IMG/VR virus record: IMGVR_UViG_3300027710_000011
Location: 124,001-188,000 of that record
Length of the DNA: 64,000 bases
Direction: 5' to 3' (one strand)
Under the pieces are notes generated by a model. That model ran no database searches and was not told the DNA's origin. It saw nothing but the letters and a program-made list of their open reading frames with translations. Below, piece after piece: positions 23,754-45,220 of the stretch. A program made the translations under genes and the position numbers. Position 1 is the first letter of the stretch; the number at the start of each line of letters is the position of its first letter.

Positions 23754-25175
23754 TTACTTCAGTTGCAAACCAGAAGCAACGCTATGGCTGCCCTTAGCGT
23801 GAGCAGCAATGCTCTTCGAAATTGCGGTCAGCAAGTACGAGATCGTGCGGCCAGAAGCTTCGGACAGACGCGTGTACGGCACAGTCGCGCTCTTCGTGAT
23901 CGAGTTGGTCACGATGAGGGATTGCAGCGACATTGCGTAACAGAGTGGATTCTGAGTATCCATCTTGCTCACGCGTGATGCGATTTGATCGCAGCAAGTC
24001 CGAGAAAACGCAGTACGCTTCTGCAAAGATGCAGAGATGCTACGGCTGCCGGAGCGTGCGCTGTAGAACGTCAGCAATTGCTTCACGAGCTTGATAGCTT
24101 TGGCAATCTCAGCCATGCTCATTGCTTCCACTTCCACCACAGCGGCGGCGGAGACAGCGTCATTCACAACCGTGATGCGGTTGCGGTGCGCCACACGAGC
24201 GATCAGGTCTTGCACCGAAGTGCTGGAGTGCATGCTGATCGAGGCGAAGACATCTTTAGGGATGTACTCTGCTTCAATGCGAATGCCGCCAATCAGCTGC
24301 GGCGTTTGCGTAATGATGCTGCCGTCAGGACCAGACAGGTGAGCGGCAGGGTAGCCGCTGAACAAACGAGGCACATTGAACGCACCGGAGATTTGTTGCA
24401 GCAACCGAACCGTACCGTCACGCTGAGCGTGTTGAACAGTTTGACCTTCCGTTTTCTTGATGGCCAAATCGCTCTCGTACAGACGAACGAAGCCGGAACC
24501 GTATTCGTAGTTGGCATCGCCAACCGAATCCATGAAGTTGCCCATCACATCAGCGAACTTGGCGGATTCGGCAAGCAGCTCTTGCATGCTGCTGACGCCC
24601 TTGCCTTGAACGGTAGGCAACTGGATCTTGATGTTGTCAACGTTTTTGGTAAGGGTACCGGCGCTGCTCAGTTCGTCGTAAGCCTTTTCAAGCTTCTTCA
24701 AACGAGTTTCGCTACCACCAGCAATCAACATCAAACGCTGGATGTAGCTGGCGATGTAGGTGCTGGCTTGACGCAGCAGTTGCTTGATGGCCGCGATGAT
24801 GCGAGCAATGGTTTCTTTCACCTTGCGAACGACTTCCGCACCGGTGATGCGAGCATCACCCAACATGTCTTCCATGGCAGGCGTGATCACTTCACCAGTG
24901 TCTTCCGTGCCAGCAGCAGCGAAGTCGCCAGCCACCTGGATCAATGCTGCTTCCTTCGGAGTGATTTCGCGGATGTGATCGACAACGAACGCCAAATCTT
25001 CCAGAGCCGAGACCATCGGCGCTGCGCGTTCAGTTTCGGCAAAGGTGCCTTCGAGTTGTTGTTGCAGTGCGCATGCTTCTTCAATGGCCTGCACTTGCTC
25101 TTCAAGAGCGACAGTAGGCAGGACACCGAGACCGAGCGTGCGCTCTTTGTAAACAGTTGCAATGAGCTTGCTCAT
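23754..25175 (-). CDS. internal head (inner-body family) protein
   Basis: VALE/SALE/PAME sites followed by the amphipathic helix VVRKVKETIARIIAAIKQLL. Confidence 0.7.
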   Translation of the reverse strand: MSKLIATVYKERTLGLGVLPTVALEEQVQAIEEACALQQQLEGTFAETERAAPMVSALEDLAFVVDHIREITPKEAALIQVAGDFAAAGTEDTGEVITPAMEDMLGDARITGAEVVRKVKETIARIIAAIKQLLRQASTYIASYIQRLMLIAGGSETRLKKLEKAYDELSSAGTLTKNVDNIKIQLPTVQGKGVSSMQELLAESAKFADVMGNFMDSVGDANYEYGSGFVRLYESDLAIKKTEGQTVQHAQRDGTVRLLQQISGAFNVPRLFSGYPAAHLSGPDGSIITQTPQLIGGIRIEAEYIPKDVFASISMHSSTSVQDLIARVAHRNRITVVNDAVSAAAVVEVEAMSMAEIAKAIKLVKQLLTFYSARSGSRSISASLQKRTAFSRTCCDQIASRVSKMDTQNPLCYAMSLQSLIVTNSITKSATVPYTRLSEASGRTISYLLTAISKSIAAHAKGSHSVASGLQLK

Positions 25176-25276
25176 GATGTATTTTCTGTCGGTTGTTTAG
25201 TGCAGACCACGACTTTCAACAAGAAAGTCATTAGGAGAATTCTACATACAATGAAGAACGCAGAAAGCTGGTTGAA

Positions 25277-25312
25277 ATAAAACGAGTGAGCTTAAACACT
25301 CACTCGTTTTAT
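25277..25312. terminator. intrinsic terminator
   Basis: AATAAAACGAGTGAG...CTCACTCGTTTTATT. Confidence 0.8.
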
Positions 25313-25323
25313 TATTACGCCAA

Positions 25324-26553
25324 TTACGCCAACTTAGCGTTGATGCTTTGCTCTTCCACGTCACGGATGCGCGCAAGCGCTTTATTCAACGATGTGCATT
25401 CGCTATCGATTGCTGAGCTGAGCTTAGTGATCGAGGTGATGTCTTTGATGATGCCGCCGAGAATTTCGCGCATCTGCGAAGCCTTCATGGGACCATAGGT
25501 TTTTCTACCTGTGAGCTTGAGGTCGATATCATTATCGTGACGGCGCAGATGGTCCTTGAAATTCTTCATCTCTTGCTCAAGACTCTTGGACAGAGTTGTC
25601 AAGCTGAGAGCGCCGCTTTCGCCGAGGAAACGAGCGTAGTCCGAAACCACATCCTCGATTTCAGAGACCAGATCATGGCTGATCTTGCTCGTGTTTTCTT
25701 CAGACGGCTCATCACCACCACCAATCAGAGATTGCGTGACCACGAAGTAGTTCTTGCAGAACGAAGCTGTGGACGACAGAGTGTTCGTGTGATTGATGCG
25801 CTCGGTTTGAACTCCGATCTTCACGCCGGCGTGCCAGGTCTTTTCATCGAACTTCTTCTCAAAGTTCAAGAGCTGACGTTGTGCAGCTTCCATCTTGTTC
25901 AGCACGCTGACATCCATCGTTTCTTCAACGTGACCAGCTTCGGCTTCATTGGCCGCGATACGAGTCTCAGCCAGGTCGGCGACGATCGGGACGTATTGCT
26001 CAATAGCTTTGGAAAGCTCGAGCATACTGGCGCAGCGCTTGCGAATGCTGTTGATCTTGCGGCTATCAGCCGAACGGCCAACCATGTGCTTGAATGCGGA
26101 CACGGTTTCCTTGAGATGCTTGAAGCCATTGCGGAACTTCTCGATAGCCCAAGCAATGAAAGCCTTGATCTTTTCGACCACGTAGGCGATCATCTGTTTG
26201 ATCTTGTCGATGATGGCTTGAGACTTGTCGCTGGTCGAAACTTGTTCGACATTCATAACGGCGCTGGACTCGAGGGCTGGTGTGAACACAGCGCCACTGA
26301 TACCGGACGATGCACCAGCGATGTCGCCGATCACTTGAACCAGAGCGATGTCGGTGGCGTCGAGTTCTTTCAGGGATTCCAGAACCAGGCTCAAGTTTTC
26401 CAGACCAACAGCCACATCTTCGGCTTGCTTGGCATCGGTCAGGCAGTTCTCGATGTCCAGCACTTGGGCCAGACCTTCGTAGGTGTTAGCTACGGCGTCA
26501 GCTTCGGCTTCGGCTTCCAGAGCCAGAGACAAAGCGATATTCTTTTCAGTCAT
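25324..26553 (-). CDS. internal head protein
   Basis: LALE/GLE/PALE sites and an amphipathic helix; ATG at 26553 with GAGG SD. Confidence 0.7.
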   Translation of the reverse strand: MTEKNIALSLALEAEAEADAVANTYEGLAQVLDIENCLTDAKQAEDVAVGLENLSLVLESLKELDATDIALVQVIGDIAGASSGISGAVFTPALESSAVMNVEQVSTSDKSQAIIDKIKQMIAYVVEKIKAFIAWAIEKFRNGFKHLKETVSAFKHMVGRSADSRKINSIRKRCASMLELSKAIEQYVPIVADLAETRIAANEAEAGHVEETMDVSVLNKMEAAQRQLLNFEKKFDEKTWHAGVKIGVQTERINHTNTLSSTASFCKNYFVVTQSLIGGGDEPSEENTSKISHDLVSEIEDVVSDYARFLGESGALSLTTLSKSLEQEMKNFKDHLRRHDNDIDLKLTGRKTYGPMKASQMREILGGIIKDITSITKLSSAIDSECTSLNKALARIRDVEEQSINAKLA

Positions 26554-26616
26554 GTCAAACCTCTTCAGGGTTGGTAACTTGAGCTTAGTCAAGTTTTGTT
26601 AAATGCGTCATAAGAA

Positions 26617-26648
26617 GAGTATCAGATCCTTTTACGGATCTGATACTC
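26617..26648 (-). terminator. hairpin/terminator
   Basis: GAGTATCAGATCC-TTTTAC-GGATCTGATACTC. Confidence 0.7.
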
Positions 26649-26695
26649 AACTATGATCAGTCTACTGAAATGATCGCGTTATGCAATTCTGAACA

Positions 26696-28219
26696 TTACT
26701 TCAGGAGTGCAGTTTCGCCATCATTCTTTTCAGCTTTGCCTTCAAGCTTGGCAATACACAGATCAACGTAACGGATCACGTTGGCACTGGTACTGATAGC
26801 GAAAGCGAACGAACGCTCGTGGATGCCGGCGGCCAGGGCAGGAGCGATTGCGGAAATCGAGCGCAGGAAATCGCGGTCCTCATCAGCGAGGTCAACGTCT
26901 TCCTTGGATTCGATGTTTGCAACAGCTGCTTCCAGTTTGGACACCAGAATCTTGCCGGCCTTGAAATCACGCTGGAACTTGCGAATGATCGAAGTCGTCT
27001 TGATGACTGTCTCGAGGACATTCAACAAACCTTCCGGAGGCAGAACATCAAGGTCTTTGAGTTCAGCGTTGTCCGTGCGCTTGATCATGTATTCGAACTC
27101 GCGCAGATCTTCCGTGGTCTTGGGCAGACACAGAACACCCACGTGGTTACCAGGCAGCAAGTCGGTGGTCAGCACATCAACACGATCACCAGCGCCGTCG
27201 ATGTCGAATTCGGCATTGCTGGAGTCATGAGGGAAGTGACCGTCCAACGCACGCTTGAGCACGCGTGGGAAGTTTTCCATCATGCGACCGATATCCTTGT
27301 CCTGAACGAATGCTTCGATCAGGGTGTTCAGATAGTCGATGTAACCGGAGTCAGCAGACTCATAGGCGTCCTTGACCAGGTCGTGCATGTTCTGGAAAGC
27401 TGCATCGTTCCAGCCAGAATCCGTGTAGCCCAGCGCCATCTTCAGTCGTTGGTTGCTGATGACAGCACCTTCACCGACTGTGGAGCCACGCAGGCCACGA
27501 ACGCGCGAACGCATCGACATCGCGGCACGCTCAACTTTGGCGGCTGTGTTGAAGATACTGGCGAAGAATTCTTGAGCATGCACGTAGGCACGACGAACGG
27601 CCTCGATGATCGTGCGCAGCAGACGCACGACTTGATCGCGAATGCTGCTGACCTTTTCACGCATGCTGGCACCAAAGCCTGCGCCGTCCTCGAGGGCCAC
27701 TGCAGGGTTTTCCAAGCCAAGCTTGTTGTAGATGCTCTCAATCGCCAGATCAAGAACAGCACGACCGGCATCGGTGTCAGCTTCAACGGCCTTGGTTTCT
27801 TCGGCAGAGCTTGCCAAGTCTTCCAGCTCATGAACGGCCACGCATGCCTTCTTCAGGTCACTGGCGTTGGCATCAAGAGCACGTTCGCCGTCACGCATTT
27901 CGCCGACGTCTTCCAGGATGTCGATAATGTCGACTTCGCCGGCTTCGAGCTCAGGTGCGTCAGGATCCAGAGGACCATCTTCATCAAGCACTTCGTCAGC
28001 GGGTGTCTCGCGACTACCTTCGTCAACTTCATCGGCCACGACTTCTTGGATGGCTTCCACCGTGGTTTCAGGCTCTACCACCGGAGCGTCATCGGTACCA
28101 GCAGCAGGCACTTCGTCCTGATTACCAGTAGCTTCGCCGCTTTCCAAAGGCACTTCTTCACGACCTTCAGCAGTTGCTTCGAGAGCAACACGCATCAAGT
28201 TGTTTTGATTTTGTTTCAT
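26696..28219 (-). CDS. internal head protein with acidic propeptide
   Basis: VALE/AIE/VALE sites, acidic N-terminal third and an amphipathic helix. Confidence 0.7.
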   Translation of the reverse strand: MKQNQNNLMRVALEATAEGREEVPLESGEATGNQDEVPAAGTDDAPVVEPETTVEAIQEVVADEVDEGSRETPADEVLDEDGPLDPDAPELEAGEVDIIDILEDVGEMRDGERALDANASDLKKACVAVHELEDLASSAEETKAVEADTDAGRAVLDLAIESIYNKLGLENPAVALEDGAGFGASMREKVSSIRDQVVRLLRTIIEAVRRAYVHAQEFFASIFNTAAKVERAAMSMRSRVRGLRGSTVGEGAVISNQRLKMALGYTDSGWNDAAFQNMHDLVKDAYESADSGYIDYLNTLIEAFVQDKDIGRMMENFPRVLKRALDGHFPHDSSNAEFDIDGAGDRVDVLTTDLLPGNHVGVLCLPKTTEDLREFEYMIKRTDNAELKDLDVLPPEGLLNVLETVIKTTSIIRKFQRDFKAGKILVSKLEAAVANIESKEDVDLADEDRDFLRSISAIAPALAAGIHERSFAFAISTSANVIRYVDLCIAKLEGKAEKNDGETALLK

Positions 28220-28255
28220 GTCTAATCCCTTTTCAAGATTGCTACGTAGTAGTTA

Positions 28256-28285
28256 AGACGAGAGGTATTTCTACCTCTCGTCTCA
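28256..28285 (-). terminator. hairpin/terminator
   Basis: GACGAGAGGTA-TTTC-TACCTCTCGTC. Confidence 0.7.
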
Positions 28286-28292: not shown

Positions 28293-30290
28293 TTAGGCTG
28301 CGGCAGGAGCCGGGGCTGCTCCCGCAGCCCCGGCAGGAGCTTCAGCCTTCTTCGGGGCCAGAGCGGCCAGCGACTTCTTGCAGTAGTTCAGCGAAGCGCT
28401 GTTGTTGGCGAACGCAACCTTCACGGCATTCGAAGTCAGGCCGGCAGCCAGTTGATGCAGAACCTTGCCCAATGCGGGATCGGGTTTGGCATCAGCACCG
28501 GCAGCTTTGGCGGCGTAACCGTTGAAGCTGTTCAAAGCACTCTTGAGCTGACGACTCATGTTGGTCAGAGCAGACATGCTCTTGGCGCTGTTGGCGATCA
28601 CAGTGGCCAGGCCGCGGACTTCAGGAGCAGACAGAGCCGGGATTGCGGTTGTCGCAACTTCGGCCGGGACGTACTGACGGCCGAAAGCCATCTTGGGCAG
28701 ATCAGCAGCAGTCTTGGGAACGTAAGCCCACAGGACTTGGTTGCCAGGCAGAACGGGCGAAGCAAAGCCCTGCGTGCCTTCAGGAGCAGCGGCAACGCCC
28801 AGCGAAGCCAGATCGTTGTTCGGCTTCAGAGCAGCAGCCACGTTGCCGTAGATTGCTTGAACCAGCTTTTCCTTGTTGGCCAAGCTGGCATCACCGGTTT
28901 CACCAGCGCGCTCAACCATCTTGGTGATGCCGTCGACGAAGATGCCGCCGTTGGCAGCAATTTTGTCCAGTGTGCCGTTGACGGACACCATCTGCTGCAC
29001 GATGTTCTTAGGAACAGCGGTGCCGATGGCGAAAGCCTTAGCCAAAGCAGCGTCTTCCAGCGGTTTGTCGGAACGAGCATCGCCCATGGCTGTGGCTTGT
29101 TTCAGCAAGCCAGCTGCTTGTTGACCTTGGAGAACGGCGCCAGAGGCCAGCTTGTCGTAGAAACCGATGACCATGCTGATGAATTTGGCGATGGCGGCCT
29201 TGATGACTTCCCACACGTCCTTGGCGGTCTGCTTGATTTCTTCCAGAGCGATGGAAGTTGCCGAGATGCGGACGCCAGGCTGTTCAAAGGACTCCATGGC
29301 CAGGATGCCGATGGGAGGAGCCAGCTTCAAAGTTTGGTGGATGTGTTCCACAGCCACTTCCAGAACTTGAGCAGCAGCCTTGGGCAGGCCGCCTTCTTCA
29401 GCGCTGGATTCCACGATGTCGGCGATCTTGCTCAGGGCTTCACCACCTTCGTTGTAGGTGTTCAGCTCGGTGGCCATTTCGTCCAGCTCAGGTGCGATCT
29501 GATCAGCAGTGATCATTTCGGGCGAAGAGCCGATGGGGGTGGTATCGGAAGTGACAACCAGGTCTTCCTTGGACACGGCAGCTTCGGCACCTTCTTCGCC
29601 TTCAGCCTTGGTCTCGTCGATGGCGGACTGCACTTCTTCAGCAGCAGCATCCGACTCGGCAGGAGTCGGCGTAGCGTCCACAGCGGGTTCGTCAGCAGCA
29701 GGCACTTCAGCCGCAGGGGCGTCAGCGGCCGGTTCAGCTGCAGGCTCACCGCCTTCAACAGGAGCCGCGTCGGCGGCAGGAACTGCGTCAACCGCAGGCG
29801 CGTCTTCAGCAGGAGGTGCATCGGCAGCAGGTGCTGCGTCAGCAGGAGCATCGGCCGGGACGTCGGCTGCGGGAGCAGCGGCTTCGCCTTCGGCAGGCAC
29901 AGCGTCGACAGCAGGTGCGTCCACAGCGTCAGCAGCGACATCAGCAGCGCCACCGGCATCGGCGGGAGGAACTTCAGCGACAGCTTCAGGCACCACTTCA
30001 GCCACAGGCTCAGCAGGAGCGGGAGGCACTTCCACCACAGCAGTACCTTCGGCCGGCTTGGAAGCTTGTTCCACTTCGACCTTGATGATCACGGTCGGAG
30101 CAGTTGTTTCGGCCACAGGAGCGACTTCGGGAACACCGGCTTCACCAGCGCCGGCGGCCACGGCGTCAGCGGTCGTGTCGGCAGCGGCTTCGGTCGGCAC
30201 AACCGCGGGGACTTCGTCAGATTCCAGAGCGACAGCGGATTGGCGGGCCATCAAGCCGGCGAGAACTGCGCGGTTCAGATTACGTTGCAT
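28293..30290 (-). CDS. major internal head / inner-body protein (gp93-family-like) with long Ala/Pro/acidic propeptide
   Basis: VALES, ~200 aa of low-complexity A/P/D/E, AMESF...IALEE, amphipathic helix and LPGN; strongly biased codons. Confidence 0.75.
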   Translation of the reverse strand: MQRNLNRAVLAGLMARQSAVALESDEVPAVVPTEAAADTTADAVAAGAGEAGVPEVAPVAETTAPTVIIKVEVEQASKPAEGTAVVEVPPAPAEPVAEVVPEAVAEVPPADAGGAADVAADAVDAPAVDAVPAEGEAAAPAADVPADAPADAAPAADAPPAEDAPAVDAVPAADAAPVEGGEPAAEPAADAPAAEVPAADEPAVDATPTPAESDAAAEEVQSAIDETKAEGEEGAEAAVSKEDLVVTSDTTPIGSSPEMITADQIAPELDEMATELNTYNEGGEALSKIADIVESSAEEGGLPKAAAQVLEVAVEHIHQTLKLAPPIGILAMESFEQPGVRISATSIALEEIKQTAKDVWEVIKAAIAKFISMVIGFYDKLASGAVLQGQQAAGLLKQATAMGDARSDKPLEDAALAKAFAIGTAVPKNIVQQMVSVNGTLDKIAANGGIFVDGITKMVERAGETGDASLANKEKLVQAIYGNVAAALKPNNDLASLGVAAAPEGTQGFASPVLPGNQVLWAYVPKTAADLPKMAFGRQYVPAEVATTAIPALSAPEVRGLATVIANSAKSMSALTNMSRQLKSALNSFNGYAAKAAGADAKPDPALGKVLHQLAAGLTSNAVKVAFANNSASLNYCKKSLAALAPKKAEAPAGAAGAAPAPAAA

Positions 30291-30392: not shown

Positions 30393-30992
30393 TTAATCGT
30401 TCATGCCGAACAAGATGTGACCAGTGGTCAGCATGTCACTGAAGCCGCCGGACTGATGCATCCATTGTTGAACGACTTCGTCGATCGACAAGTTCAACTG
30501 AGCGACTTCGGTCAGATTACGGCGACCAAAGTAAGTGACTGCTTTCTCAGACAACGCAGTCGAACTCACGCGGCGCTCGTCTTCATCCAAGATCACGTTC
30601 CAGTTCTGGACAGCCATGCGGCGATTACCCGTCATCAGGTAGTGCAGCGTGTCATCCAAGAAGTCCCGGTGAGTTTCACCAAAAGAGGGACTTTGGAATT
30701 GAGCTGTATACCACTCAGCGAAGTTTGTGGTACCGAAGGCCAGCATGAAGTCCAGCATGGCTTGTTCTTTGAAGTCGAACTTGCGAGCGTTCAGGTCATT
30801 ACGACCCAGACTCTGGTACGCGCTTTCCACCTTCAAGTTCGCAATGATGACCTTGTCATCGTTGGTATCGAACAAGGAGACGTCGTATTGCAGACGGCCC
30901 GACGGACGAGGCTTGCGTTCCAGGATTGGCTCAAGCTGGGCACCCAGGAAACCTCGTGGGTAAATCTTGAACTTTCCGAGAAGGCTGTTCAT
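30393..30992 (-). CDS. conserved jumbo-phage protein (gp91-like)
   Basis: YPRGFLG..L.P, W...Q..SP; synteny. Confidence 0.6.
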   Translation of the reverse strand: MNSLLGKFKIYPRGFLGAQLEPILERKPRPSGRLQYDVSLFDTNDDKVIIANLKVESAYQSLGRNDLNARKFDFKEQAMLDFMLAFGTTNFAEWYTAQFQSPSFGETHRDFLDDTLHYLMTGNRRMAVQNWNVILDEDERRVSSTALSEKAVTYFGRRNLTEVAQLNLSIDEVVQQWMHQSGGFSDMLTTGHILFGMND

Positions 30993-31906
30993 TACGCACC
31001 CTCCAGCTCAGCCACGGTTGCTTGCATAGCTTGCACACGTGACTCGCATTGAGCGATGGTCTTCTCCAGCTTGGCGTTCGGGCGCTTGGCTTGGAGTTCC
31101 TTCATGAGCTGCAAACGCAACTCGATGAGGCGCAGCTCTTCCTTGGATTCGTTGAAGCGAGCGACTTGCCACTCGGCAATCACCATGCGAACGAAGTAGA
31201 TCGGATTTGCCTTGGTGGCAATGATGCCTGCCTTCATCGGATCGAGCTTGTTGAGGCCCACCGTGGAGTTCAGGTTGTTCTCGTTGGATTCGCTGACCGT
31301 GATTTCAGGGACTTCGTTCAGCTTCTTCATCACCGTAGCAACGTCGCCGATGGCAGTACCGTAGGCGACCAAGAAGTCGCTGAAGGTTTCTTCCAACCAC
31401 TTGCGCTCGTCCTTGGTGATGGAATCTTCGATCACGGTGCCGGATTCTTCATACCGGGCGCTCTCGTAAACGAAGATCATATTCAGCCACTTGCGGCCGT
31501 ACTTGGACACCAGGTAGATTGCGTTGACGTACTGCAGCACAGCGGCTTGCTTGTAGGTCAGGCCCAGCGACGACACTTGCCCAGACAGGTTTGCTTGCAC
31601 CAGCTTCTCAGCCGTGTTCAAGTTTTCCTGCACCGTCTTCAGATGGTGAGCGATGTGAACAATGGGGTTACCATTGTCAGGGCCGGAAACGCTGCGCTTG
31701 AAGTCGGAAACCATACCGGAGATGGTCTCATCCTTGAACTTCCAACTGCGAGCCAAGTCGGCCGCGAAGCTGTAGGATGCTTGAAGCTTTTCGAGTTCAC
31801 CACGAGTGATGCGGATGTCCTCGATGATGGTGTCCTTGTTGAAAATGGCCACCAGTTTCGAAACGAAGTCTTTGAATTTCATAAGGTCTACGGACCCGAC
31901 TCTCAC
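30992..31906 (-). CDS. virion head protein (gp90-like)
   Basis: NPIYFVRM.IAEWQ followed by a coiled-coil C-terminus; start may be ATG 31882. Confidence 0.65.
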   Translation of the reverse strand: MRVGSVDLMKFKDFVSKLVAIFNKDTIIEDIRITRGELEKLQASYSFAADLARSWKFKDETISGMVSDFKRSVSGPDNGNPIVHIAHHLKTVQENLNTAEKLVQANLSGQVSSLGLTYKQAAVLQYVNAIYLVSKYGRKWLNMIFVYESARYEESGTVIEDSITKDERKWLEETFSDFLVAYGTAIGDVATVMKKLNEVPEITVSESNENNLNSTVGLNKLDPMKAGIIATKANPIYFVRMVIAEWQVARFNESKEELRLIELRLQLMKELQAKRPNAKLEKTIAQCESRVQAMQATVAELEGA

Positions 31907-31947
31907 GCCGGGCGCGTCTCCTGAATAAGAAGGTTGGAAGATAACTC

Positions 31948-31974
31948 TAGACTGGGAGGCACACCTCCCAGTCT
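31948..31974. terminator. hairpin/terminator
   Basis: TAGACTGGGAGG-CACA-CCTCCCAGTCTA. Confidence 0.75.
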
Positions 31975-31981
31975 ATTGTTT

Positions 31982-37252: not shown

Positions 37253-37253
37253 T

Positions 37254-37967
37254 TTACGTCTTATTTACAGCTTCTTCTATTGACAACTTATCCCGATTGA
37301 TTCTTTGATGAAGTTTCCAATACGGGATCCCTGATGATTTTGATATCTCAGAGAGACTCATCTGTTGTCCATTGAATAAGAAAGTTTTTGGTTGTGTGAG
37401 TGGGCCAAAAACCTTATCTAGTGGCCAGTTGTTATTTAATCGATTTTCAAGTGTAGCTACTTCAATCCCGATTAAATTGGACCATTCAGAAAGCGTAAGC
37501 GTCTTATCATCAAAAGTGTAAGTGCTTGGTTTGCGAATTTCAGGATTTAAAGCTTCGCTGACGCTAGCGCCTTTACTTAATCTTGTATAAATTGTCTTAG
37601 CAGAAACATTCAACTTTCTGCTCATTTCAGCTACAGTTCCTTTATTTCCATCGTGTTCCAGTACGACATTTGTTCTAAGATTGTTAGCTTGCTCCATAGG
37701 AGTTGCCCAACGACAATTACCAGGTTCGTAATTCCCATTCATGTCGGGGAAGCGATCAATTGAATATTCAGGGCCAGGCTTAGAACCCATATCGGTATAG
37801 AAGTTTTCGAAAGAATTCCTCCATCGATCACAAATCGTAATACCACGACCACCGTAGTTGTGATAAGCAGGATTATTTTGATTAAAACAACGAGCGATCA
37901 TGCTACACCAGCTTTGGTACTCGCTAGTCTTGGACATTCCGTGCGTGCTATTTATACCAGTTACCAT
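37254..37967 (-). mobile_element. free-standing HNH homing endonuclease
   Basis: HGMS...EY.SW.SM..RC.N....Y.NYGGRGITIC.RW..SFENF..DMG.KP...SIDR..D.NGNYEPGNCRWAT..EQANN plus 3 HTH-like repeats; AT-rich; GGAGG SD before ATG 37967. Confidence 0.9.
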
Positions 37968-38110
37968 AATGCCATCCTCCAATTCTTGACACAAAGGTGA
38001 TATGTGGTTATAAAACCGTAGACTTCGTTCTGCATGAGCGCGCAAGTCTTCGTTAATTGAGACGTCATAAATGGAGGGATCACTCCCTCCATTTATGCTA
38101 TCTAGTTTGT

Positions 38111-39562
38111 TTACGAATAAACAAGCTTCTCGATTGCTTCCGGTGTAGAGTTCACCAGGGTTGCCATCTTCTTGCAGTATTGACCCACAAAGAAATCCAT
38201 GTCGATTTGGAAATTCATGCACGCTGTGAGCAATTTCACAGTGTGTTTGTGAATCCAAATCGCCAGCTGCATAGCTGCTTTCAGGAGGTGGTGAACTTCC
38301 TTGATCAACGCAGTGTTGCTGCTCTTTCTCATCTTTTCAATGATAGTAAAGCAACTTTTCATGCAATCGTCGAGGCTGTTCGTTTCTTCAGCTGCGCCCT
38401 TCTCACTGAACTGAATTTCCTTGTTGACAATGAGAATGCGTTCAGCGATGAAACCTAACGTCACCGTATCGCTTTGCTGTTCCGTCATGGGCTCGATGCC
38501 GTCGGTCATTCGCTCCAGCTTTTGAATGTAGCCGAACAAATCACCGTCATGTATACGAGACAGACGTCTCATATAGGTCGATAGCTGTCTCTGAAGATCT
38601 CTATCGGTGGAATCTGCATCAAGACCTTTTAACGTGTCTTTAACAGCGGCGAGCACGTCACCGTTCTGTGCTTTTGAGGAAATGATCTCTTCAAAAACAC
38701 GATCGGTTCTTGAAACAGTAATCGCGCCGTGTTCGTTCTCACAAAACCCCACACGAACTTGTTTCAATCTGTCGAGCAACTTTTCAGTAGCGTCAGAGAT
38801 GGCTGTTTGATCGGACAGGTCTTTTGACAGTTTGGAAACACTGTCGACAAGCTTCTTGGGAGTATGGAAGTTTTTCTCCAGAGCAGTCATGTTCTTTACG
38901 AGAGTTCCAAGACCCTCGCTGCTCTGACGATATTTCCGCATGAGATCGGAAGTGACAAACTTCTTGTACTGCACACGTATCCACTCGATCGCTTCGAGGA
39001 TATATTTCTTGAGCTTCTCAATCAGCTCTTCGATTTTCATCCCCACTTCAGTAGCGTCTATCTCTTTCGAGGATTCACTTCTGCCTAAGCGCTTGAGTCG
39101 AGCCGATATGATCGGATCTTTGGACAAATCAACCCCTTGGCGCTGGTAAAGGGGATTTCGGTTAAGCAGCGGTATGGCTTCAAGCAGCGCGCTTTTCATT
39201 GCTTGGTTGCCGTTTTTATCGGCACTGAAGCTATCTGCCTCATACTCAAACGAAGCCACAACGTTCTTACCAGGCTCGATCTTTTCCATATGGCCGCAAG
39301 CAATGTGACCATACTCGTGATCCATGATTGCATTTTTAGCGGATGCTGAAAGCTTATTCCAAATACTGGTGATCGCGAAGATGATGTGTTCACCGTAAAC
39401 GATCAGATCCGGCTCTCTCACGATGCTTTTGACGTCAATGACAGCGTGTTTTGGAATAGCACCAATCCCCACCATCTCCAGGTACTTGTAGGTACCCATG
39501 TCGGAGAAGTCGCTTTCTTCGATAAACAGAATCTGTCCGTACGCGCACTTTTCGGTTTTCAT
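38111..39562 (-). CDS. zincin-like (HEXXH) domain fused to an internal-head-protein module
   Basis: IMDHEYGH...EYEADSFSA, then DATE and the amphipathic helix IEELIEKLKKYILEAIEWI. Confidence 0.6.
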   Translation of the reverse strand: MKTEKCAYGQILFIEESDFSDMGTYKYLEMVGIGAIPKHAVIDVKSIVREPDLIVYGEHIIFAITSIWNKLSASAKNAIMDHEYGHIACGHMEKIEPGKNVVASFEYEADSFSADKNGNQAMKSALLEAIPLLNRNPLYQRQGVDLSKDPIISARLKRLGRSESSKEIDATEVGMKIEELIEKLKKYILEAIEWIRVQYKKFVTSDLMRKYRQSSEGLGTLVKNMTALEKNFHTPKKLVDSVSKLSKDLSDQTAISDATEKLLDRLKQVRVGFCENEHGAITVSRTDRVFEEIISSKAQNGDVLAAVKDTLKGLDADSTDRDLQRQLSTYMRRLSRIHDGDLFGYIQKLERMTDGIEPMTEQQSDTVTLGFIAERILIVNKEIQFSEKGAAEETNSLDDCMKSCFTIIEKMRKSSNTALIKEVHHLLKAAMQLAIWIHKHTVKLLTACMNFQIDMDFFVGQYCKKMATLVNSTPEAIEKLVYS

Positions 39563-39579: not shown

Positions 39580-40599
39580 TTAGTGCACGATGATGGGCAT
39601 TCTTGTTACGTTCTTTTGACCGATTTTGCTCATGAGTTGCGAAACCGTCTGAACGTAGACATCTGCTTTCTGAACGACAAATGCCTCAGCGTGAATGATG
39701 TCGGACAGCAACGTGACGACGGCGTCAGTTTTTGATCCAGAACCATCAGTGATAGCCTGCATGCCACCTTCGCTTTCAAGCGTCTTCAGAATTGCCGTCA
39801 ACGTCTTAACGTTGCTCTCATGCGCATCGTTAATGCTGTTAAAAATATTGACGATTTGTTCAATCTTCTTAGCGGCATCGTCAGTGTGGAGATTTTCACT
39901 CACAAGCTTATCAGCTTTTTCGTGAGCGTCGAGGGCCATTGATTTAAAGCTATCGACCTTATCCTTGAGGGACTTGAAGAATTGCTTATTTTCAATGAAC
40001 TTGTCCAGGTTAGCAGCCAGAGTGCTGATCCGAACACAGTCTTCACAAATCGCCATAAAGGCTGCGACATTTTCCTTATCAATGAATTCAGAAAAAATGG
40101 TTCGATCTTTTTCTGACATTTCATCAATAAGCTTATTGCCTTTGCTGGTGACAGAACTTGCAATCAAGGCAAAGCGATTTCCGACATCTTTCGGAACAAC
40201 ATCCTTGCCCTTAAAGAATTTGAGGATCAATGCCTTGCAGGCACGGAACCATTCTGCAAGTTTTGCGATAACAGCTTTGAAGAAGGAAATGATCTTCTGG
40301 ATGATTTCCTTGAAAACGGATTTCTTCTCACCGTCAACTGCCTCAAGGGCAAAGCTGTAACGAGTCTTCGTTACAGCTTGACTGTAGAAGCCCAGAGGGC
40401 AATCGTCAGTAACCATGCCAGGAACCAAGTCCATTGATTCCATAGCGATCTTCTGGTTCATACCACCGATTGCTTGGAGGCTGTTTCGCAGAGAGTCCAA
40501 GCCGCGAAGCTTGGTTACCAACGTACCGACGCTTGGATCTGGAGCGATTTCTTCGAGAGATACCGCGCCCAATTCCGCGTCTTCTTTAAAACCATTCAT
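39580..40599 (-). CDS. internal head protein (paralog of 40667-41965)
   Basis: GGMNQ..AMESM.LVP..VT.DCPLGFYSQ..TKTRYSFALEAV leader. Confidence 0.7.
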   Translation of the reverse strand: MNGFKEDAELGAVSLEEIAPDPSVGTLVTKLRGLDSLRNSLQAIGGMNQKIAMESMDLVPGMVTDDCPLGFYSQAVTKTRYSFALEAVDGEKKSVFKEIIQKIISFFKAVIAKLAEWFRACKALILKFFKGKDVVPKDVGNRFALIASSVTSKGNKLIDEMSEKDRTIFSEFIDKENVAAFMAICEDCVRISTLAANLDKFIENKQFFKSLKDKVDSFKSMALDAHEKADKLVSENLHTDDAAKKIEQIVNIFNSINDAHESNVKTLTAILKTLESEGGMQAITDGSGSKTDAVVTLLSDIIHAEAFVVQKADVYVQTVSQLMSKIGQKNVTRMPIIVH

Positions 40600-40666: not shown

Positions 40667-41965
40667 TCAGACATAAAGTCTTTGCACGCCCTCAATGTCG
40701 AGATGTTTTGCCAGCTCGTCACAATCGATGTGTTCGTTTTTTGGTTTGAACGATTGTGCTTTACTCATAGCCGTCTTAGCGATCCATTCATACCCGCGTA
40801 AAGAATCCTCAATAGCATCAACAAGGTACTTGAACTCATAAATGAAGTTCTTGCAGGACTCTGTCAATCGCGAGATTGATTTTTGCGCAGTGAGGATGGC
40901 TTTCATGTTCTCATCGATGTTGCGCATTTCGTCATCACTGACTTTGCCACTCATGTCAATCTTGAACAAGACTAAACCAGACGCGCTACTTGAAAAATCA
41001 CCGAAGAAAGCAAGTACTTTCTTGTTCTCTTTCGCAAAAAAGAGCAATTCAACAAGCTCATTCGGCGTGAGAGTTTTCTCGCCGCTGCTTTCAGAATGAA
41101 GTCTTTTTTCAAGGATCGAATTAGCAAGTGAGTTTAACTCGCTCACCAATTCTTTATTTGTGAAGAAAACGCTATGTCTGACGTTATCCGAGTTTCTAAT
41201 GAAGTCTTTAATTTCATCTTGCAGCTTGTGTGCAACTTCAAAAGCTTTGTGAAACTGTTTAAGAGTTTCAGGATGAGCTTTTAAATAGCGCAAAAAGGAC
41301 AACCTCAAACCAAATCTGGAAATTGGCTTTCTGGCGTACCAGACTGAATCACGAGCAAACTTGTCAACAAACACCTGAGATTCACTCTCAGAAATCCCAT
41401 GCACATACTGCACCAAAGATTCAGCGTACTTGTAGTTATCGGCCAACATTTCTTGATATTGCACGACAAAATGAAGAACGGCGTCGTGGGCGTTTGAGAA
41501 TTTGTTGGCTTGCGCCAAGGTCTTCTCTTTCACTTCTGGATCCAAGAAACGCTTGATGGCGTGAATGATCTTACCCATCCATTCCTTGAATTTCTCCCAC
41601 ATCCTCGTAAGGATACTCTTTCTTTCTTCCTCTACTGCTTCGAGAGCAAAGCTGTAGCGAGTCTTCGTGATGTCTTGACTGTAAAAGCCCAAGGGACAAT
41701 CAGCAGTGACAAGGCTTGGAACCAAGCTCATTGATTCCATGGCCAGCTGTTGATTCATGCCGCCAAGGTTTTCCAACGTAGCTTGGAGGTAATCCAGGCC
41801 GCGTTGTTTCGTCATCAAGGCACTGATGTCCAAATCTTCATTCAGCTCAGGAACTTCACCTGGCACAACTTCTTGGAAGACGGCTTGGTCAAATTCCTTA
41901 GCCGCTTCCTTTGCCGGCTCGATGACTTCATTATCGAGCTCAACACCTTCGTTAAGGCTTGACAT
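40667..41965 (-). CDS. internal head protein (paralog of 39580-40599)
   Basis: Same leader, different C-terminal domain. Confidence 0.7.
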   Translation of the reverse strand: MSSLNEGVELDNEVIEPAKEAAKEFDQAVFQEVVPGEVPELNEDLDISALMTKQRGLDYLQATLENLGGMNQQLAMESMSLVPSLVTADCPLGFYSQDITKTRYSFALEAVEEERKSILTRMWEKFKEWMGKIIHAIKRFLDPEVKEKTLAQANKFSNAHDAVLHFVVQYQEMLADNYKYAESLVQYVHGISESESQVFVDKFARDSVWYARKPISRFGLRLSFLRYLKAHPETLKQFHKAFEVAHKLQDEIKDFIRNSDNVRHSVFFTNKELVSELNSLANSILEKRLHSESSGEKTLTPNELVELLFFAKENKKVLAFFGDFSSSASGLVLFKIDMSGKVSDDEMRNIDENMKAILTAQKSISRLTESCKNFIYEFKYLVDAIEDSLRGYEWIAKTAMSKAQSFKPKNEHIDCDELAKHLDIEGVQRLYV

Positions 41966-42520: not shown

Positions 42521-43873
42521 TCAGATGGATTTGAGAGCTGCCGCCTTGGCGTACAGATCATTGTGGGCGAGACCTTCCAGTTGCCTTTGGAAGGTTACGT
42601 TGGCTTGACGGTTAGCCGCGTTGGCGTTGAAGAAAGCAAAAACCTTCGAGACGAGCGTGGGCTCAGAAGAACCGAGCTTGAGCACCTTATCCATGAAGGC
42701 AAGTTCTTCGTTCAGTTGTTTAACGTACGCAGCGTTAAACTTGGTGTTACCGCGAGCCAGAGCAACTTTAATTGCCTGCACCTGCTGGTTACGCAGTCTG
42801 ACCAAACGACCGTGGTTGCTATCGTACATAGGTTCGAAAGGACTCACATCTTCTTTAGAGATGAGACCAACGCCTAGGATTGCGGCCACGATACCGATGA
42901 TGACCATGAACGGGGCACCAGTAGCGACCAAGCCACCACCTAGTACGGTTGCAACAAGACCGCCGACGAAACGCGCAGCTTGAGTGTAGTAGAGCGTGGC
43001 GCGATCTTGCATCGAATAGTCCGGATTCCATTTCATCAGCTTATTCAAAGCTGAGAACAAATGAGCGCCAGCACCATGTCGAGCCGCGTATTGATCGGCT
43101 AACATTTCAAAGGTGTTCATGTCGTAAAAGCTATGGCCGGATTGTGTCCGGATTGCTTTCATGCCATTGCTCAAAAGCACAGTGCTCACCACCATGTCTT
43201 CAGCGTTTTCAATGGACTGAACGACGTTACGATCAATGCCAAGATCCTTACCGGCAGTCCTGATAATCGTCGCGCGCTTGCTTGGTTCTTTCACATTCAG
43301 AAGATCGCGTTGCAGCTCAGCCAATACTTGATTGGTGGAGACTGAACGATCCAGGAATTCCAGCGATGTCCAGAAGTGACCGATCTCGTGCAAAAGCAAA
43401 GAGCAGTATTCTTCATCGGTGAACTTGGCACCGAATGCTTCCTTGTACAACATCTCTCGACTCATGCTGAGTTCGCCATGAATTGTCTTGGAGATGCTTC
43501 CTGTTGCGACACATTTCTTCAAATCGAGACTGACGCTGAGTTCCTTCTTGAACGCATTGATTGACTTGATAATTTCATCGTTATTATCGATGGCAACAAA
43601 GTCGTAGGAATTGAAGATGTGACTCCAATCCAAACGCGTGAAGAAGATAGAACCAGTGGCTCCGACCGCTAGATCAAAGTTGATGATCAAGCCAGTGCGA
43701 TCAAGCACTGTCTTACTCAACCTCTTCTCCAGGTTTTCCCACTCGGCGTTCGAAGCCGCAGCGCGTTGATCAGTCGGAAAAGTAGCCAGGTCAGCTAACA
43801 GATCTTTGAAGAAACCGTCACCTTGAAAATGTATAGCTTCTGTCGCAATTGACAGATTCTTTTCGGTGGACAT
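42521..43873 (-). CDS. virion protein (gp84-like) with HEXXH motif and a hydrophobic hairpin
   Basis: IATEAI.FQ N-terminus, LLHEIGH, EMLADQYAARHG, two Gly-rich hydrophobic segments, LE.LA.N.LY C-terminus. Confidence 0.65.
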   Translation of the reverse strand: MSTEKNLSIATEAIHFQGDGFFKDLLADLATFPTDQRAAASNAEWENLEKRLSKTVLDRTGLIINFDLAVGATGSIFFTRLDWSHIFNSYDFVAIDNNDEIIKSINAFKKELSVSLDLKKCVATGSISKTIHGELSMSREMLYKEAFGAKFTDEEYCSLLLHEIGHFWTSLEFLDRSVSTNQVLAELQRDLLNVKEPSKRATIIRTAGKDLGIDRNVVQSIENAEDMVVSTVLLSNGMKAIRTQSGHSFYDMNTFEMLADQYAARHGAGAHLFSALNKLMKWNPDYSMQDRATLYYTQAARFVGGLVATVLGGGLVATGAPFMVIIGIVAAILGVGLISKEDVSPFEPMYDSNHGRLVRLRNQQVQAIKVALARGNTKFNAAYVKQLNEELAFMDKVLKLGSSEPTLVSKVFAFFNANAANRQANVTFQRQLEGLAHNDLYAKAAALKSI

Positions 43874-43902
43874 GGTTTTGCCTTTTATGTTGTCAGTACT
43901 GT

Positions 43903-43917
43903 AATCACATAAATTAG
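43903..43917 (-). promoter_or_regulatory. putative late promoter (CTAATTTATGTGATT)
   Basis: 15-nt exact repeat of 45284-45298; contains the TATG core of phiKZ late promoters; lies upstream of a virion gene. Confidence 0.6.
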
Positions 43918-43939
43918 CGTAATGATTGACATACGCATA

Positions 43940-43966
43940 AAGAGGGAGGGTAGACCTCCCTCTTTA
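43940..43966. terminator. bidirectional terminator
   Basis: GCATAAAGAGGGAGG-GTAGA-CCTCCCTCTTTATGC. Confidence 0.8.
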
Positions 43967-43981
43967 TGCTACTTACGTCTG

Positions 43982-45220
43982 TTACCGGGAATTAATGAAT
44001 TCCTTGACCACACGCGTATTCAGATCATGGACAGACTTCCAGACCGTGTTCAAAACGTTCAAGCCCAAGACCACTTGAATCAAGTTCCCGCGAACCAAGA
44101 AGCTGTGGACTTGCGTCACATACTCGGAATGCGCGTCGAACGTACCTGTCGGACTCTTGACAGCTGAGTCGTTGAGTTTGTTCAAAGCATCCAAGAAGAC
44201 CTTGGAGTTAGTCGCGAAGAAATTCTTGATCTGGTTGGCGTACTTGACGATCTCGTCGTTCAGAGCCACCAAGCGATCTTGAAGATCTTGAGCTTTCATC
44301 AAGTTTGTCGTGATCGTCACGCGGCCCAATGCCAAGTCATCCTTGGCTGGAGGTTTGATCGAAGCACGATACTTCAACACGCCTGCATACTGGTTGTCTT
44401 TGATTTCTTCCAGGATGTGAATGCAGTTGAAAACCTTCAGCTCAGTAGCGAAGTGACGAGCCCTGCGCTCACCTTCTTCAACTACGTGTCTGCAGGTTTC
44501 ATCAAAGACTTGCAGATTTGCATCCGGCGCATTCATCAGCTTGTTGTAAGCTTCGATGACGAACTTGCAATGACGGAACTGCAAAGTCAACAATGCCACG
44601 GTGTCCTTGATGTAGCTAGCTGCCAACTGCTCCAACTTCTCAGTCTCAGCGATGATCTTCGAGTACTCGAGATGCAAGAAGCTTGGAATCTGGATAGGGA
44701 TTGAACCCGTTGAGTATCCTTCAGTAGCGACGGAAGGACTATCGGGCTGGCTTTTAGCCAGATCCAGTAAGCGCTGCGTTTCATTCAAGGAGCGCTTGTT
44801 CTGCTCTTCTGAACTGAGGATATGCATCACGTAGTTCTTGATGCGGTTGAACATGTCAACAGCAAACGCGATGATCTTCTTGATGAACTCTTTGATCTTG
44901 TCCATCACGCTGGCCTGCGCGCCTTCAACGGCTTCCAGAGCCAAGGCGTACTTTTGCTCTTTACTCAGGATACCAACTTGACGCTTGTTTGTACCGAGTA
45001 CGGCACAAGCCGCGCCGTAGCTTTCCATAACGAGCGAACCACTAGCGTCGTTGGCTTCGGTCAACTGACGCTTAAAGGCGCTGAGTTCGGCAGAACGCTG
45101 CAGAGATTCACTGAAGCCGGCCACGAGCTCATTGAGGTCGTTTGTGTACGACTCAGTGCAAAGCTCAGTAAGAGAAGTCTTTGGATCAACGAGAAGACTA
45201 TCCCAGATTATCTTGTTCAT
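43982..45220 (-). CDS. internal head protein
   Basis: LALE/VATE sites and the amphipathic helix VMDKIKEFIKKIIAF. Confidence 0.7.
   Translation of the reverse strand: MNKIIWDSLLVDPKTSLTELCTESYTNDLNELVAGFSESLQRSAELSAFKRQLTEANDASGSLVMESYGAACAVLGTNKRQVGILSKEQKYALALEAVEGAQASVMDKIKEFIKKIIAFAVDMFNRIKNYVMHILSSEEQNKRSLNETQRLLDLAKSQPDSPSVATEGYSTGSIPIQIPSFLHLEYSKIIAETEKLEQLAASYIKDTVALLTLQFRHCKFVIEAYNKLMNAPDANLQVFDETCRHVVEEGERRARHFATELKVFNCIHILEEIKDNQYAGVLKYRASIKPPAKDDLALGRVTITTNLMKAQDLQDRLVALNDEIVKYANQIKNFFATNSKVFLDALNKLNDSAVKSPTGTFDAHSEYVTQVHSFLVRGNLIQVVLGLNVLNTVWKSVHDLNTRVVKEFINSR

What the first reader, a model, noticed from the sequence alone, without database searches (positions are those of the whole stretch)
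23754..45220. Eight genes share an 'AxE site + amphipathic helix + variable body' architecture
Seen in ORFs 23754, 25324, 26696, 28293, 38111, 39580, 40667 and 43982: an acidic leader (a zincin-like domain in 38111), an A-x-E site, then a K/I/F/W amphipathic helix (e.g. IIQKIISFFKAVIAKLAEWF, MWEKFKEWMGKIIHAIKRFL), followed by largely dissimilar C-termini. Known: paralogous processed head proteins exist in phiKZ and SPN3US. Inference: the leader plus helix is a portable capsid-loading or ejection tag carrying interchangeable cargo. It may insert into membrane after injection and could be engineered for protein delivery.
Basis: partly seen in the sequence, partly recalled or inferred. Interest (0 to 1): 0.6.

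Follow-up and report, generated by a model that had tools for sequence, protein, structure and literature searches.

The report
Jumbo-phage processed internal head proteins
The eight genes are this new phiKZ-like jumbo phage's internal head and ejection proteins, made with a cleavable acidic leader. This architecture is already described for phiKZ and SPN3US, so the finding is ordinary, but sibling phages keep the leaders while the mature parts are swapped exactly at the cleavage site.

Summary
All eight minus-strand ORFs carry an acidic leader, an A-x-E site and then an amphipathic helix.

It is a known architecture. The window is syntenic with phiKZ gp84-gp99. Genes 23754-30290 sit where the phiKZ inner-body operon sits (Pfam PF12699). 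Genes 40667 and 39580 sit at the gp86 / SPN3US gp47 position. The genome encodes a gp175-type prohead protease. The solved phiKZ capsid cleavage site E163 aligns with A-M-E-146 of this phage's capsid protein.

The "unrelated cargo" reading is only partly right:
- Three bodies are PF12699 by sequence.
- 25324 is PF12699 by predicted fold, and its best solved match is phiKZ gp86.
- 43982 is PF12699-like by language-model features.
- The bodies of 40667 and 39580 are undetermined.
- 38111 is an orphan with an M48-like zincin in front.

The helix looks like the first helix of the mature helical domain rather than part of the tag. None of the helices is hydrophobic enough to span a membrane.

The new detail comes from sibling phages. 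Leaders are 82-89% identical in four of six gene pairs. Mature parts are only 19-63% identical. DNA homology stops at the cleavage-site codon in two genes. Verdict: a new member of a known kind, of modest interest.

The parts
28293..30290 (-). Internal head protein precursor (665 aa). It has a 350-aa Ala/Pro/Glu-rich acidic leader with sites ALE-23, AME-333 and ALE-350 (codons 29241-29249). The helix covers aa 351-382 (29145-29240). The body is canonical PF12699.
   Evidence: Pfam PF12699 91.4 bits, full length. PHROG 2497 'internal head protein' 4e-20. Foreign tag HMM 1e-26. Body HMM 4e-29. It sits at the position of the phiKZ gp92-97 operon.
26696..28219 (-). Internal head protein precursor (507 aa). 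The leader covers aa 1-177 (net charge -39) with sites ALE-14, AIE-161 and ALE-177 (27689-27697). The helix covers aa 188-222 (27554-27658). The body is canonical PF12699.
   Evidence: Pfam PF12699 67.5 bits. Tag HMM 7e-18. Body HMM 7e-26.
25324..26592 (-). Internal head protein precursor (422 aa). The leader covers aa 1-108 with sites ALE-26 and ALE-108 (26269-26277). The helix covers aa 124-156 (26125-26223). The body is not recognised by Pfam but has a PF12699-type predicted fold.
23754..25175 (-). Internal head protein precursor (473 aa). The leader covers aa 1-102 with sites ALE-25 and AME-102 (24870-24878). The helix covers aa 115-145 (24741-24833). The body is canonical PF12699.
   Evidence: Pfam PF12699 37.7 bits. 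Tag HMM 4e-25. Body HMM 1e-35. The sibling's 859-aa orthologue carries the same leader followed by two site+helix+body units. The window gene keeps only the second unit.
43982..45220 (-). Divergent PF12699-like head protein precursor (412 aa). The leader covers aa 1-96 with VMES at aa 64-67 and ALE-96 (44933-44941). The helix covers aa 104-133 (44822-44911).
   Evidence: Pfam PF12699 below threshold, 20.5 bits, on the helix only. Foreign tag HMM 4e-7. ESM-Atlas feature hits 0.92-0.93 to PF12699 clusters. The mature part is 94% identical to the sibling's.
40667..41965 (-). Precursor at the gp86 position (432 aa). The conserved leader covers aa 1-109 with AME-77 and ALE-109 (41639-41647). The helix covers aa 116-139 (41549-41620). 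The all-alpha mature part differs in every related phage.
   Evidence: It lies between the gp85-like and gp87-like genes. Homologues cover only the N-terminal third, at 45-72% identity. Against the sibling, the leader is 85% identical and the mature part 19%. The AlphaFold2 model is all helix but of low confidence.
39580..40599 (-). Second gene of the gp86-position type (339 aa), present only in this phage. The leader covers aa 1-86 with AME-54 and ALE-86 (40342-40350). The helix covers aa 93-128 (40216-40323).
   Evidence: 56% identical to 40667 over the leader only. PHROG 32764, N-terminal part only. Absent from four related phages.
38111..39562 (-). Orphan protein (483 aa). Residues 1-165 form a small M48/M78-like zincin with HEYGH and an E-x-x-A-D motif. 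It has an ATE-172 site (39047-39055), a helix at aa 175-204 (38951-39040) and a helical body. Its membership of the architecture is uncertain.
   Evidence: ESM-Atlas structure matches for residues 1-165, TM 0.58-0.64 by the matched peptidase models. Pfam Peptidase_M48 weak, E 0.04. No homologue among 5.8 billion proteins. Tag HMM 0.16.
37254..38258 (-). HNH homing endonuclease. It lies inside the 4.47-kb segment (about 37171-41637) that has no counterpart in the sibling phage.
   Evidence: PHROG 3377, 2.4e-64. DNA comparison with L005 and L008.
42521..43873 (-). Homologue of phiKZ gp84, a head protein. It has an HEIGH...E-x-x-A-D zincin motif and a strongly hydrophobic segment near aa 320. It lies between tag-bearing genes.
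   Evidence: phmmer against phiKZ gp84, 2.6e-11. PHROG 2767, 2.7e-60. Kyte-Doolittle 19-residue maximum 2.63.
30393..33118 (-). Homologues of phiKZ gp91 (vertex-binding complex), gp90 and gp89. They separate the first cluster from the gp87/gp88 pair.
   Evidence: Pfam PhiKZ_gp91, 6e-27. phmmer against gp89, gp90 and gp91.

Best explanation
The eight genes encode precursors of internal head proteins of a phiKZ-like (nucleus-forming type) jumbo phage.

Proposed mechanism:
1. Each precursor is made with an acidic N-terminal leader.
2. The leader brings the precursor into the procapsid. It probably does so by binding the inner face of the capsid shell or a gp177-like assembly protein. This step is inferred from phiKZ and SPN3US.
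3. The phage's gp175-type prohead protease then cuts after A-x-E at several places in the leader. The last cut falls just upstream of a long amphipathic helix.
4. That helix is the first helix of the mature, helix-rich domain. It is not a separate tag.
5. The freed mature domains form the internal protein mass (inner body) and the vertex-binding complex. Many are probably ejected into the host with the DNA. This step is inferred from the homologues.

The leaders are held constant because they must fit conserved assembly partners. The mature parts evolve fast or are replaced by recombination at the leader/mature junction.

Shown here: the sequence architecture, family membership, synteny, the presence of the protease, alignment of the capsid protein's cleavage site, and the conservation break at the site. 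Inferred: the cleavage itself, docking, ejection, and any function in the host.
For: - Synteny with phiKZ gp84-gp99, with the first cluster in the place of gp92-97.
- PF12699 and 'internal head protein' PHROG hits.
- The same site-plus-helix layout can be read in phiKZ gp86, gp93, gp94, gp95 and gp162.
- Protease homologue at genome 232700-233473: phmmer against gp175 1.5e-35, PHROG 3014 9e-81. A gp177 homologue lies next to it.
- The phiKZ capsid protein is cut at E163|N164 (PMC11297242). That residue aligns with AME-146 here.
- SPN3US gp53 and gp54 (PF12699) are cut after A-x-E, and mature gp53 starts with GWKETLKDLFER (PMC10052503).
- phiKZ gp86 is cut at SQE just before its helix. SPN3US gp47 sits at the same locus, is cut at ALE-111, and its propeptide was inferred to target the prohead (PMC5694885).
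- The 25324 model's body starts with helix 120-170, and its best solved match is phiKZ gp86 from residue 120.
- Leader versus mature conservation, and breakpoints at the site codon. The dN/dS ratio is 0.09-0.13 in leaders and 0.25-0.40 in mature parts of 23754, 25324 and 28293.
Against: - No proteomic, expression or structural data exist for this phage, so cleavage at the named sites is inferred.
- The leader-capsid complex prediction gave no answer.
- 26696 shows no leader/mature contrast (58% versus 52%), and 43982 shows the opposite contrast (74% versus 94%).
- The tag HMM from foreign proteins is not significant for 39580 or 38111.
- The bodies of 40667, 39580 and 38111 have no detectable relative of known fold.
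Confidence: 0.85

Rival explanations
1. One reading: leader plus amphipathic helix is one portable loading and ejection tag that carries unrelated cargo domains, and the helix inserts into the host membrane after injection.
For: - Bodies fall into several groups without detectable sequence similarity.
- Mature parts are replaced behind a constant leader.
- phiKZ gp93 co-localises with a lipid compartment after injection (bioRxiv 10.1101/2024.03.24.586471).
- SPN3US gp47 has a predicted transmembrane helix at its mature N-terminus (PMC5694885).
Against: - The conservation break lies before the helix, so the helix travels with the body.
- At least four, probably five, of the eight bodies belong to one family or fold.
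- The helix is the first element of the modelled domain and of the aligned part of solved gp86.
- The helices are not hydrophobic enough to span a membrane.
Confidence: 0.15
2. The proteins serve mainly as an internal scaffold or core for building the large capsid, like T4 gp22. They would be degraded and expelled rather than kept and ejected.
For: - No separate scaffold protein is known in phiKZ-like phages (PMC5694885).
- The precursors carry multiple A-x-E sites.
- The gp93 and gp162 leaders line the capsid like tape-measure proteins (PMC11297242).
Against: - Mature parts of the homologues are abundant in finished virions, at hundreds to thousands of copies, and several are injected (PMC5694885; Goslar preprint 10.64898/2026.04.21.720040; bioRxiv 10.1101/2024.03.24.586471).
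- A-x-E sites cluster in the leaders, not in the bodies, for most of the eight.
Confidence: 0.1
3. The shared pattern is a chance effect: A-x-E tripeptides and amphipathic helices are common in alpha-helical proteins.
For: - Leave-one-out HMMs built within the genome are weak for four of the eight.
- 38111 fits only by pattern.
Against: - Foreign-family HMM E-values run from 1e-26 to 4e-7 for five genes.
- The pattern is enriched at p = 1.3e-6.
- Synteny with the phiKZ genes.
- 479 cluster representatives in a 1.84-billion-protein library match the tag profile at E<=1e-3.
Confidence: 0.02

Closest known systems
PF12699 (phiKZ_IP) internal head / inner-body proteins: phiKZ gp92-97, gp162 and gp163; SPN3US gp53 and gp54; Goslar gp53-58
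   Same: - Same operon position.
- Long acidic propeptide with several S/A/G-x-E sites.
- The maturation cut falls just before an amphipathic helix that opens a helix-rich domain.
- Several paralogues per genome.
- Three window genes pass the Pfam threshold, and two more fit by fold or by language-model features.
   Different: Sequence identity to any named phage is low; the neighbouring gp98 homologue is only about 35% identical to its best match. This phage has four or five members, against eight in phiKZ and two in SPN3US. Cleavage, copy number and ejection are untested here.
Gene at the gp86 position: phiKZ gp86 (vertex-binding complex, PDB 8Y6V chain G), 201phi2-1 gp148, SPN3US gp47
   Same: - Lies between the gp85-like and gp87-like genes.
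- Propeptide of about 110 residues ending in [AS]-x-E.
- Helical mature part.
- The locus is already noted as unusually divergent between phages (PMC5694885).
   Different: This phage has two such genes, an orphan with a zincin domain in front, and an HNH endonuclease, where four relatives have one gene. Sequence similarity to gp86 itself is only marginal (profile E 0.007). The predicted transmembrane helix of gp47 is absent.
T4 internal proteins IPI, IPII, IPIII and Alt with their capsid targeting sequence (CTS)
   Same: An N-terminal address peptide is removed by the prohead protease after a small-residue-x-Glu motif. The cargo is packaged and ejected with the DNA. The CTS has been used to package foreign proteins (as cited in PMC5694885).
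   Different: The T4 CTS is 10-20 residues and binds the scaffolding core. Here the leaders are 86-350 residues, are cut several times, and in phiKZ partly remain as capsid-lining fibres. There is no sequence relation.
Polymorphic toxin loci (CDI/Rhs type), as an analogy only, from general knowledge
   Same: A constant N-terminal delivery part and a variable C-terminal part meet at a short conserved motif. The motif also marks the recombination or processing point.
   Different: No toxin or immunity genes are present, and the mature parts mostly share one helical fold. There is no evidence that the mature parts act on host targets.

Membership tests
PF12699 phiKZ_IP internal head proteins | Match to the Pfam model above its gathering score | tested here: met
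   Met for 23754 (37.7 bits), 26696 (67.5) and 28293 (91.4) against a cut-off of 27. 43982 scores 20.5, below the cut-off. 25324, 38111, 39580 and 40667 have no hit.
PF12699 phiKZ_IP internal head proteins | Helix-rich fold shared by the paralogues | tested here: inconclusive
   25324 meets it: Foldseek gives 78 BFVD hits at E<=1e-3, including Pfam-confirmed RP12 members. The 40667 model is too poor to judge (pLDDT 59). 38111, 39580 and 43982 were not folded.
PF12699 phiKZ_IP internal head proteins | Location in the operon between the gp91-like and gp98-like genes | tested here: met
   23754 to 30290 lie between the homologues of gp91 (30393) and gp98 (22102).
PF12699 phiKZ_IP internal head proteins | Removal of the N-terminal propeptide by the gp175-type protease at S/A/G-x-E | not testable with these tools
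   The sites and the protease gene are present, and the capsid protein site aligns with the solved phiKZ site. Cleavage itself needs proteomics.
PF12699 phiKZ_IP internal head proteins | High copy number in the virion and ejection with the DNA | not testable with these tools
   Known only for homologues (PMC5694885; bioRxiv 10.1101/2024.03.24.586471; preprint 10.64898/2026.04.21.720040).
gp86-position / vertex-binding complex protein | Gene lies between the gp85-like and gp87-like genes | tested here: met
   40667, 39580 and 38111 lie between 41976 (weakly gp85-like) and 34256 (gp87, E 5e-199).
gp86-position / vertex-binding complex protein | Sequence or structural similarity to phiKZ gp86 (8Y6V chain G) | tested here: inconclusive
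T4-type capsid targeting sequence system | Short (10-20 aa) N-terminal targeting peptide that binds the scaffold core | tested here: not met
   The leaders are 86-350 residues long. The system works like a CTS system but is not a member of it.

The most novel reading that the evidence does not exclude
The A-x-E codon at the leader/mature junction may be a cassette-exchange joint. On this reading the leader is a fixed address label that also supplies the homology for recombination. Phages of this lineage could then swap, duplicate, fuse in tandem or delete the mature ejected domains without disturbing capsid assembly. The gp86-position locus and part of the inner-body operon would work as a polymorphic, host-directed payload system.

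Evidence so far:
- Two junction-precise breakpoints between sibling phages.
- One leader followed by two site+helix+body units in the sibling.
- Mature parts with no detectable similarity in 9 of 10 pairs, behind one leader, across five related phages.
- A lineage-specific expansion beside an HNH endonuclease.
Probability: 0.35. Interest if true: 0.55.

Novelty: new member of a known kind. Interest (0 to 1): 0.3.

Why it matters
The biological role of the PF12699 and gp86-type proteins is described as a key unsolved question of the nucleus-forming jumbo phages (Goslar preprint). This window adds a divergent phage with a clean natural experiment. The leader is held constant while the mature part is replaced, with the break at the cleavage site. 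That separates an assembly constraint on the leader from a fast-changing function of the mature part, possibly directed at the host. It also points to where a foreign protein could be grafted for packaging. The general architecture, the capsid-targeting idea and protein delivery by fusion are already published, so the finding does not open a new field.

Tried and rejected
- Megablast of the second cluster against 50,697 phage records found no match.
- The search for related loci with the gp84-like protein in IMG/VR found nothing.
- Leave-one-out tag HMMs built within the genome were weak for 25324, 26696, 28293 and 38111. They were replaced by an HMM built from foreign family members.
- hhalign of the non-canonical bodies against the PF12699 body profile, and against each other, gave nothing significant. 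The best result was 25324 against the main body at E 0.022.
- AlphaFold2 of 40667 had low confidence (pLDDT 59, pTM 0.36). Its searches in BFVD, PDB and VIA-wide gave only generic helical-bundle matches.
- The ESM-Atlas structure search with the 25324 model was uninformative, with TM below 0.3.
- The word-index search for 38111 found only the protein itself.
- Complex prediction of the mature capsid protein with the 23754 leader (aa 26-102) returned no verdict. It counts neither for nor against binding.
- Thomas et al. 2012, the source of the phiKZ cleavage sites, is not held in the library. Its sites are quoted second-hand from PMC5694885 and PMC11297242.
- A transmembrane role for the helices was considered and set aside on hydropathy.

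Full report
**What the window is.** The window is bases 124001-188000 of a single 276,772-bp contig. No phage record matches it at DNA level. Its proteins match phiKZ-like jumbo phages at about 27-35% identity, best to Burkholderia phage FLC9 and Ralstonia phages RP12 and RP31. phmmer with phiKZ proteins shows colinearity with phiKZ gp84-gp99:
- 20656 corresponds to gp99 and 22102 to gp98.
- 30393, 30992 and 31982 correspond to gp91, gp90 and gp89.
- 33149(+) corresponds to gp88 and 34256(+) to gp87.
- 42521 corresponds to gp84. 41976 is weakly gp85-like (Pfam).

The first four genes of the finding (23754-30290) sit exactly where phiKZ has its inner-body operon, gp92-97. Genes 40667, 39580 and 38111 sit where phiKZ has gp86.

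**Checking the observation.** All eight ORFs are present as described. Each has an acidic N-terminal part, an A-x-E site and an amphipathic helix within 25 residues of the site. In five of the eight genes (26696, 28293, 39580, 40667 and 43982) a second site of the [AVG][MLI]ES type lies 25-30 residues upstream of the final site. The four genes of the first cluster also have a site near residues 14-26.

A loose pattern scan of all 89 large ORFs of the genome picks 6 of the 8 and 2 of the other 81 (p = 1.3e-6). A tag HMM made from 108 family members of other phages, with no sequence of this phage or its sibling, finds 28293, 23754, 25324, 26696 and 43982 at E 1e-26 to 4e-7. It finds 40667 at 1e-3, 39580 at 0.017 and 38111 at 0.16. 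So the architecture is real, and homologous for at least five genes. Genes 40667 and 39580 are tied in by synteny and by leader homology to the gene at the same position in RP12 and FLC9. 38111 fits by pattern only.

**What the genes are.** Pfam PF12699 ('phiKZ-like phage internal head proteins') matches 23754, 26696 and 28293 above threshold over the whole mature part. It matches 43982 below threshold on the helix. PHROG 'internal head protein' families agree.

The same layout of sites and helix can be read directly in phiKZ gp86, gp93, gp94, gp95 and gp162. The genome carries a gp175-type prohead protease (phmmer 1.5e-35; PHROG 3014 9e-81) with gp176 and gp177 homologues beside it. The phiKZ capsid protein is cut between E163 and N164 (PMC11297242), and that residue aligns with E146 of an A-M-E motif in this phage's capsid protein.

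The published work covers the rest:
- SPN3US gp53 and gp54 (PF12699) lose propeptides of 125-137 residues by cuts after A-x-E. Mature gp53 begins with an amphipathic stretch (PMC10052503, PMC5694885).
- phiKZ gp86 is cut at SQE just before its helix. SPN3US gp47 occupies the same locus and is cut at ALE-111.
- The gp47 propeptide was inferred to target the prohead like the T4 capsid targeting sequence.
- The gp86/gp47 locus was noted as unusually divergent (PMC5694885).
- C-terminal fluorescent fusions of phiKZ gp93 are packaged and injected (bioRxiv 10.1101/2024.03.24.586471).
- After cleavage, the leaders of gp93 and gp162 stay bound to the inner face of the capsid (PMC11297242).

A profile of the tag (alignment A1) finds 479 cluster representatives at E<=1e-3 in a library of 1.84 billion proteins. 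Among the 147 best with a usable body, 119 bodies form one BLAST-connected family and the rest form 17 small groups. An HMM of the large family matches the bodies of 23754, 26696 and 28293 at E 1e-35 to 1e-26. It does not match the other five, and profile-profile comparison adds nothing.

At fold level the picture changes:
- The AlphaFold2 model of 25324 has a confident body and a disordered leader. Foldseek gives 78 BFVD matches at E<=1e-3. All of the 50 listed that carry a name are proteins of jumbo phages or uncultured myoviruses. Two of them, RP12 ORF240 and ORF235, are PF12699 by Pfam.
- 43982 matches PF12699 clusters by ESM-Atlas features at 0.92-0.93, sharing 214-217 of 256 features.
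- The 40667 model is poor, and its searches are uninformative.
- 38111 has no relative at all.

So at least four, probably five, of the eight bodies are one family or fold. Three remain open.

**The helix.** The helix is amphipathic but not hydrophobic enough to cross a membrane. The Pfam model includes it. In the 25324 model it is the start of a 50-residue helix that opens the mature domain. It aligns with the start of the modelled gp86 chain. It is best read as the first helix of the mature domain.

**The new detail: leaders are fixed and mature parts change.** A sibling phage (ENA contig of 276,853 bp; loci L005 and L008) shares the gene order. Most neighbouring virion genes are 85-97% identical. 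The tag-bearing genes behave differently:

| Gene | Leader identity | Remainder identity |
|---|---|---|
| 23754 | 89% | 63% |
| 25324 | 88% | 44% |
| 28293 | 82% | 55% |
| 40667 | 85% | 19% |
| 26696 | 58% | 52% |
| 43982 | 74% | 94% |

In 40667 protein identity falls from about 88% to about 20% right after ALE-109. BLASTN homology ends at window base 41637, and the ALE codons are at 41639-41647. In 23754 homology ends at 24871, and the AME-102 codons are at 24870-24878. The sibling's orthologue (859 aa) has the same leader followed by two site+helix+body units. The window gene keeps only the second unit.

Across five related phages the gene at the gp86 position keeps its leader (57-85% identity). 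Its mature part is at background level (18-23%) in 9 of 10 pairs, while the DNA polymerase next door is 73-95% identical. The dN/dS ratio is 0.09-0.13 in the leaders and 0.25-0.40 in the mature parts of 23754, 25324 and 28293. Synonymous sites are close to saturation, so these ratios are rough.

The four relatives have one gene at the gp86 position. This phage has 40667, 39580 and 38111 plus an HNH endonuclease, in a 4.47-kb segment of lower G+C content that has no counterpart in the sibling.

**Mechanism and verdict.** The most likely mechanism is the published one:
1. The leader docks the precursor in the procapsid.
2. The prohead protease cuts after A-x-E.
3. The helix-rich mature parts are freed inside the head, and many are ejected with the DNA.

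The constant leader fits a constraint from conserved assembly partners. The changing mature part fits either relaxed selection or a host-directed role. My attempt to predict a leader-capsid complex gave no verdict.

The finding is a new member of a known kind. The junction-precise exchange is a modest new point that would need more genomes and proteomics to establish.

Noticed in passing
window 37254-38258 (-), within the segment 37171-41637: An HNH homing endonuclease (PHROG 3377, 2.4e-64) lies in a 4.47-kb segment of lower G+C content (0.45). The segment also holds the body of 40667, plus 39580 and 38111. The sibling phage has only 0.98 kb there. The endonuclease may have helped the local gene gain.
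   Followed up: partly
window 38111-39562 (-) and 42521-43873 (-): Two head-gene-cluster proteins carry M48-type zincin motifs (HExxH followed by E-x-x-A-D). One is the orphan 38111, in its first 165 residues. The other is the gp84 homologue 42521, which also has a strongly hydrophobic segment near residue 320. phiKZ gp84 shows the same motifs. A packaged metallopeptidase is implied but untested.
   Followed up: partly
genome 89086-89955 (+), outside the window (locus L012): A 289-aa ORF has AME-28 followed by an amphipathic helix that resembles the mature start of SPN3US gp53. Near its C-terminus it has three A-x-E sites (ATE-196, ALE-205, ALE-216) directly before long hydrophobic segments. 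It may be a ninth protease substrate. It has no PHROG hit; the foreign tag HMM gives E 7e-5.
   Followed up: partly
L008:15502-18081 (sibling phage): An 859-aa protein has one leader and two successive site+helix+body units (AME-102 and SME-500). It looks like a polyprotein that would yield two mature internal proteins.
   Followed up: partly
window 31982-33118 (-): The gp89 homologue, which is not PF12699, carries GMES and AMES motifs near residues 125-128 and 151-154. It is probably another protease substrate without the tag.
   Followed up: no
window 29241-30290 (-): The leader of 28293 is a 350-residue Ala/Pro/Glu/Val-rich acidic low-complexity stretch (net charge -59). It raises local G+C content to 0.59. 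It is still 82% identical to the sibling's leader.
   Followed up: no
window 20002-24802 compared with 24871-30290: Synonymous divergence from the sibling is uneven. dS is about 0.2 in the gp98-like gene but about 0.9-1.4 in the inner-body operon and about 0.9 in the gp89-like gene. This suggests a mosaic history of the region.
   Followed up: no
L008:13680-14060 (sibling phage): A 126-aa ORF lies between the sibling's second and third inner-body genes. It has no counterpart in the window.
   Followed up: no
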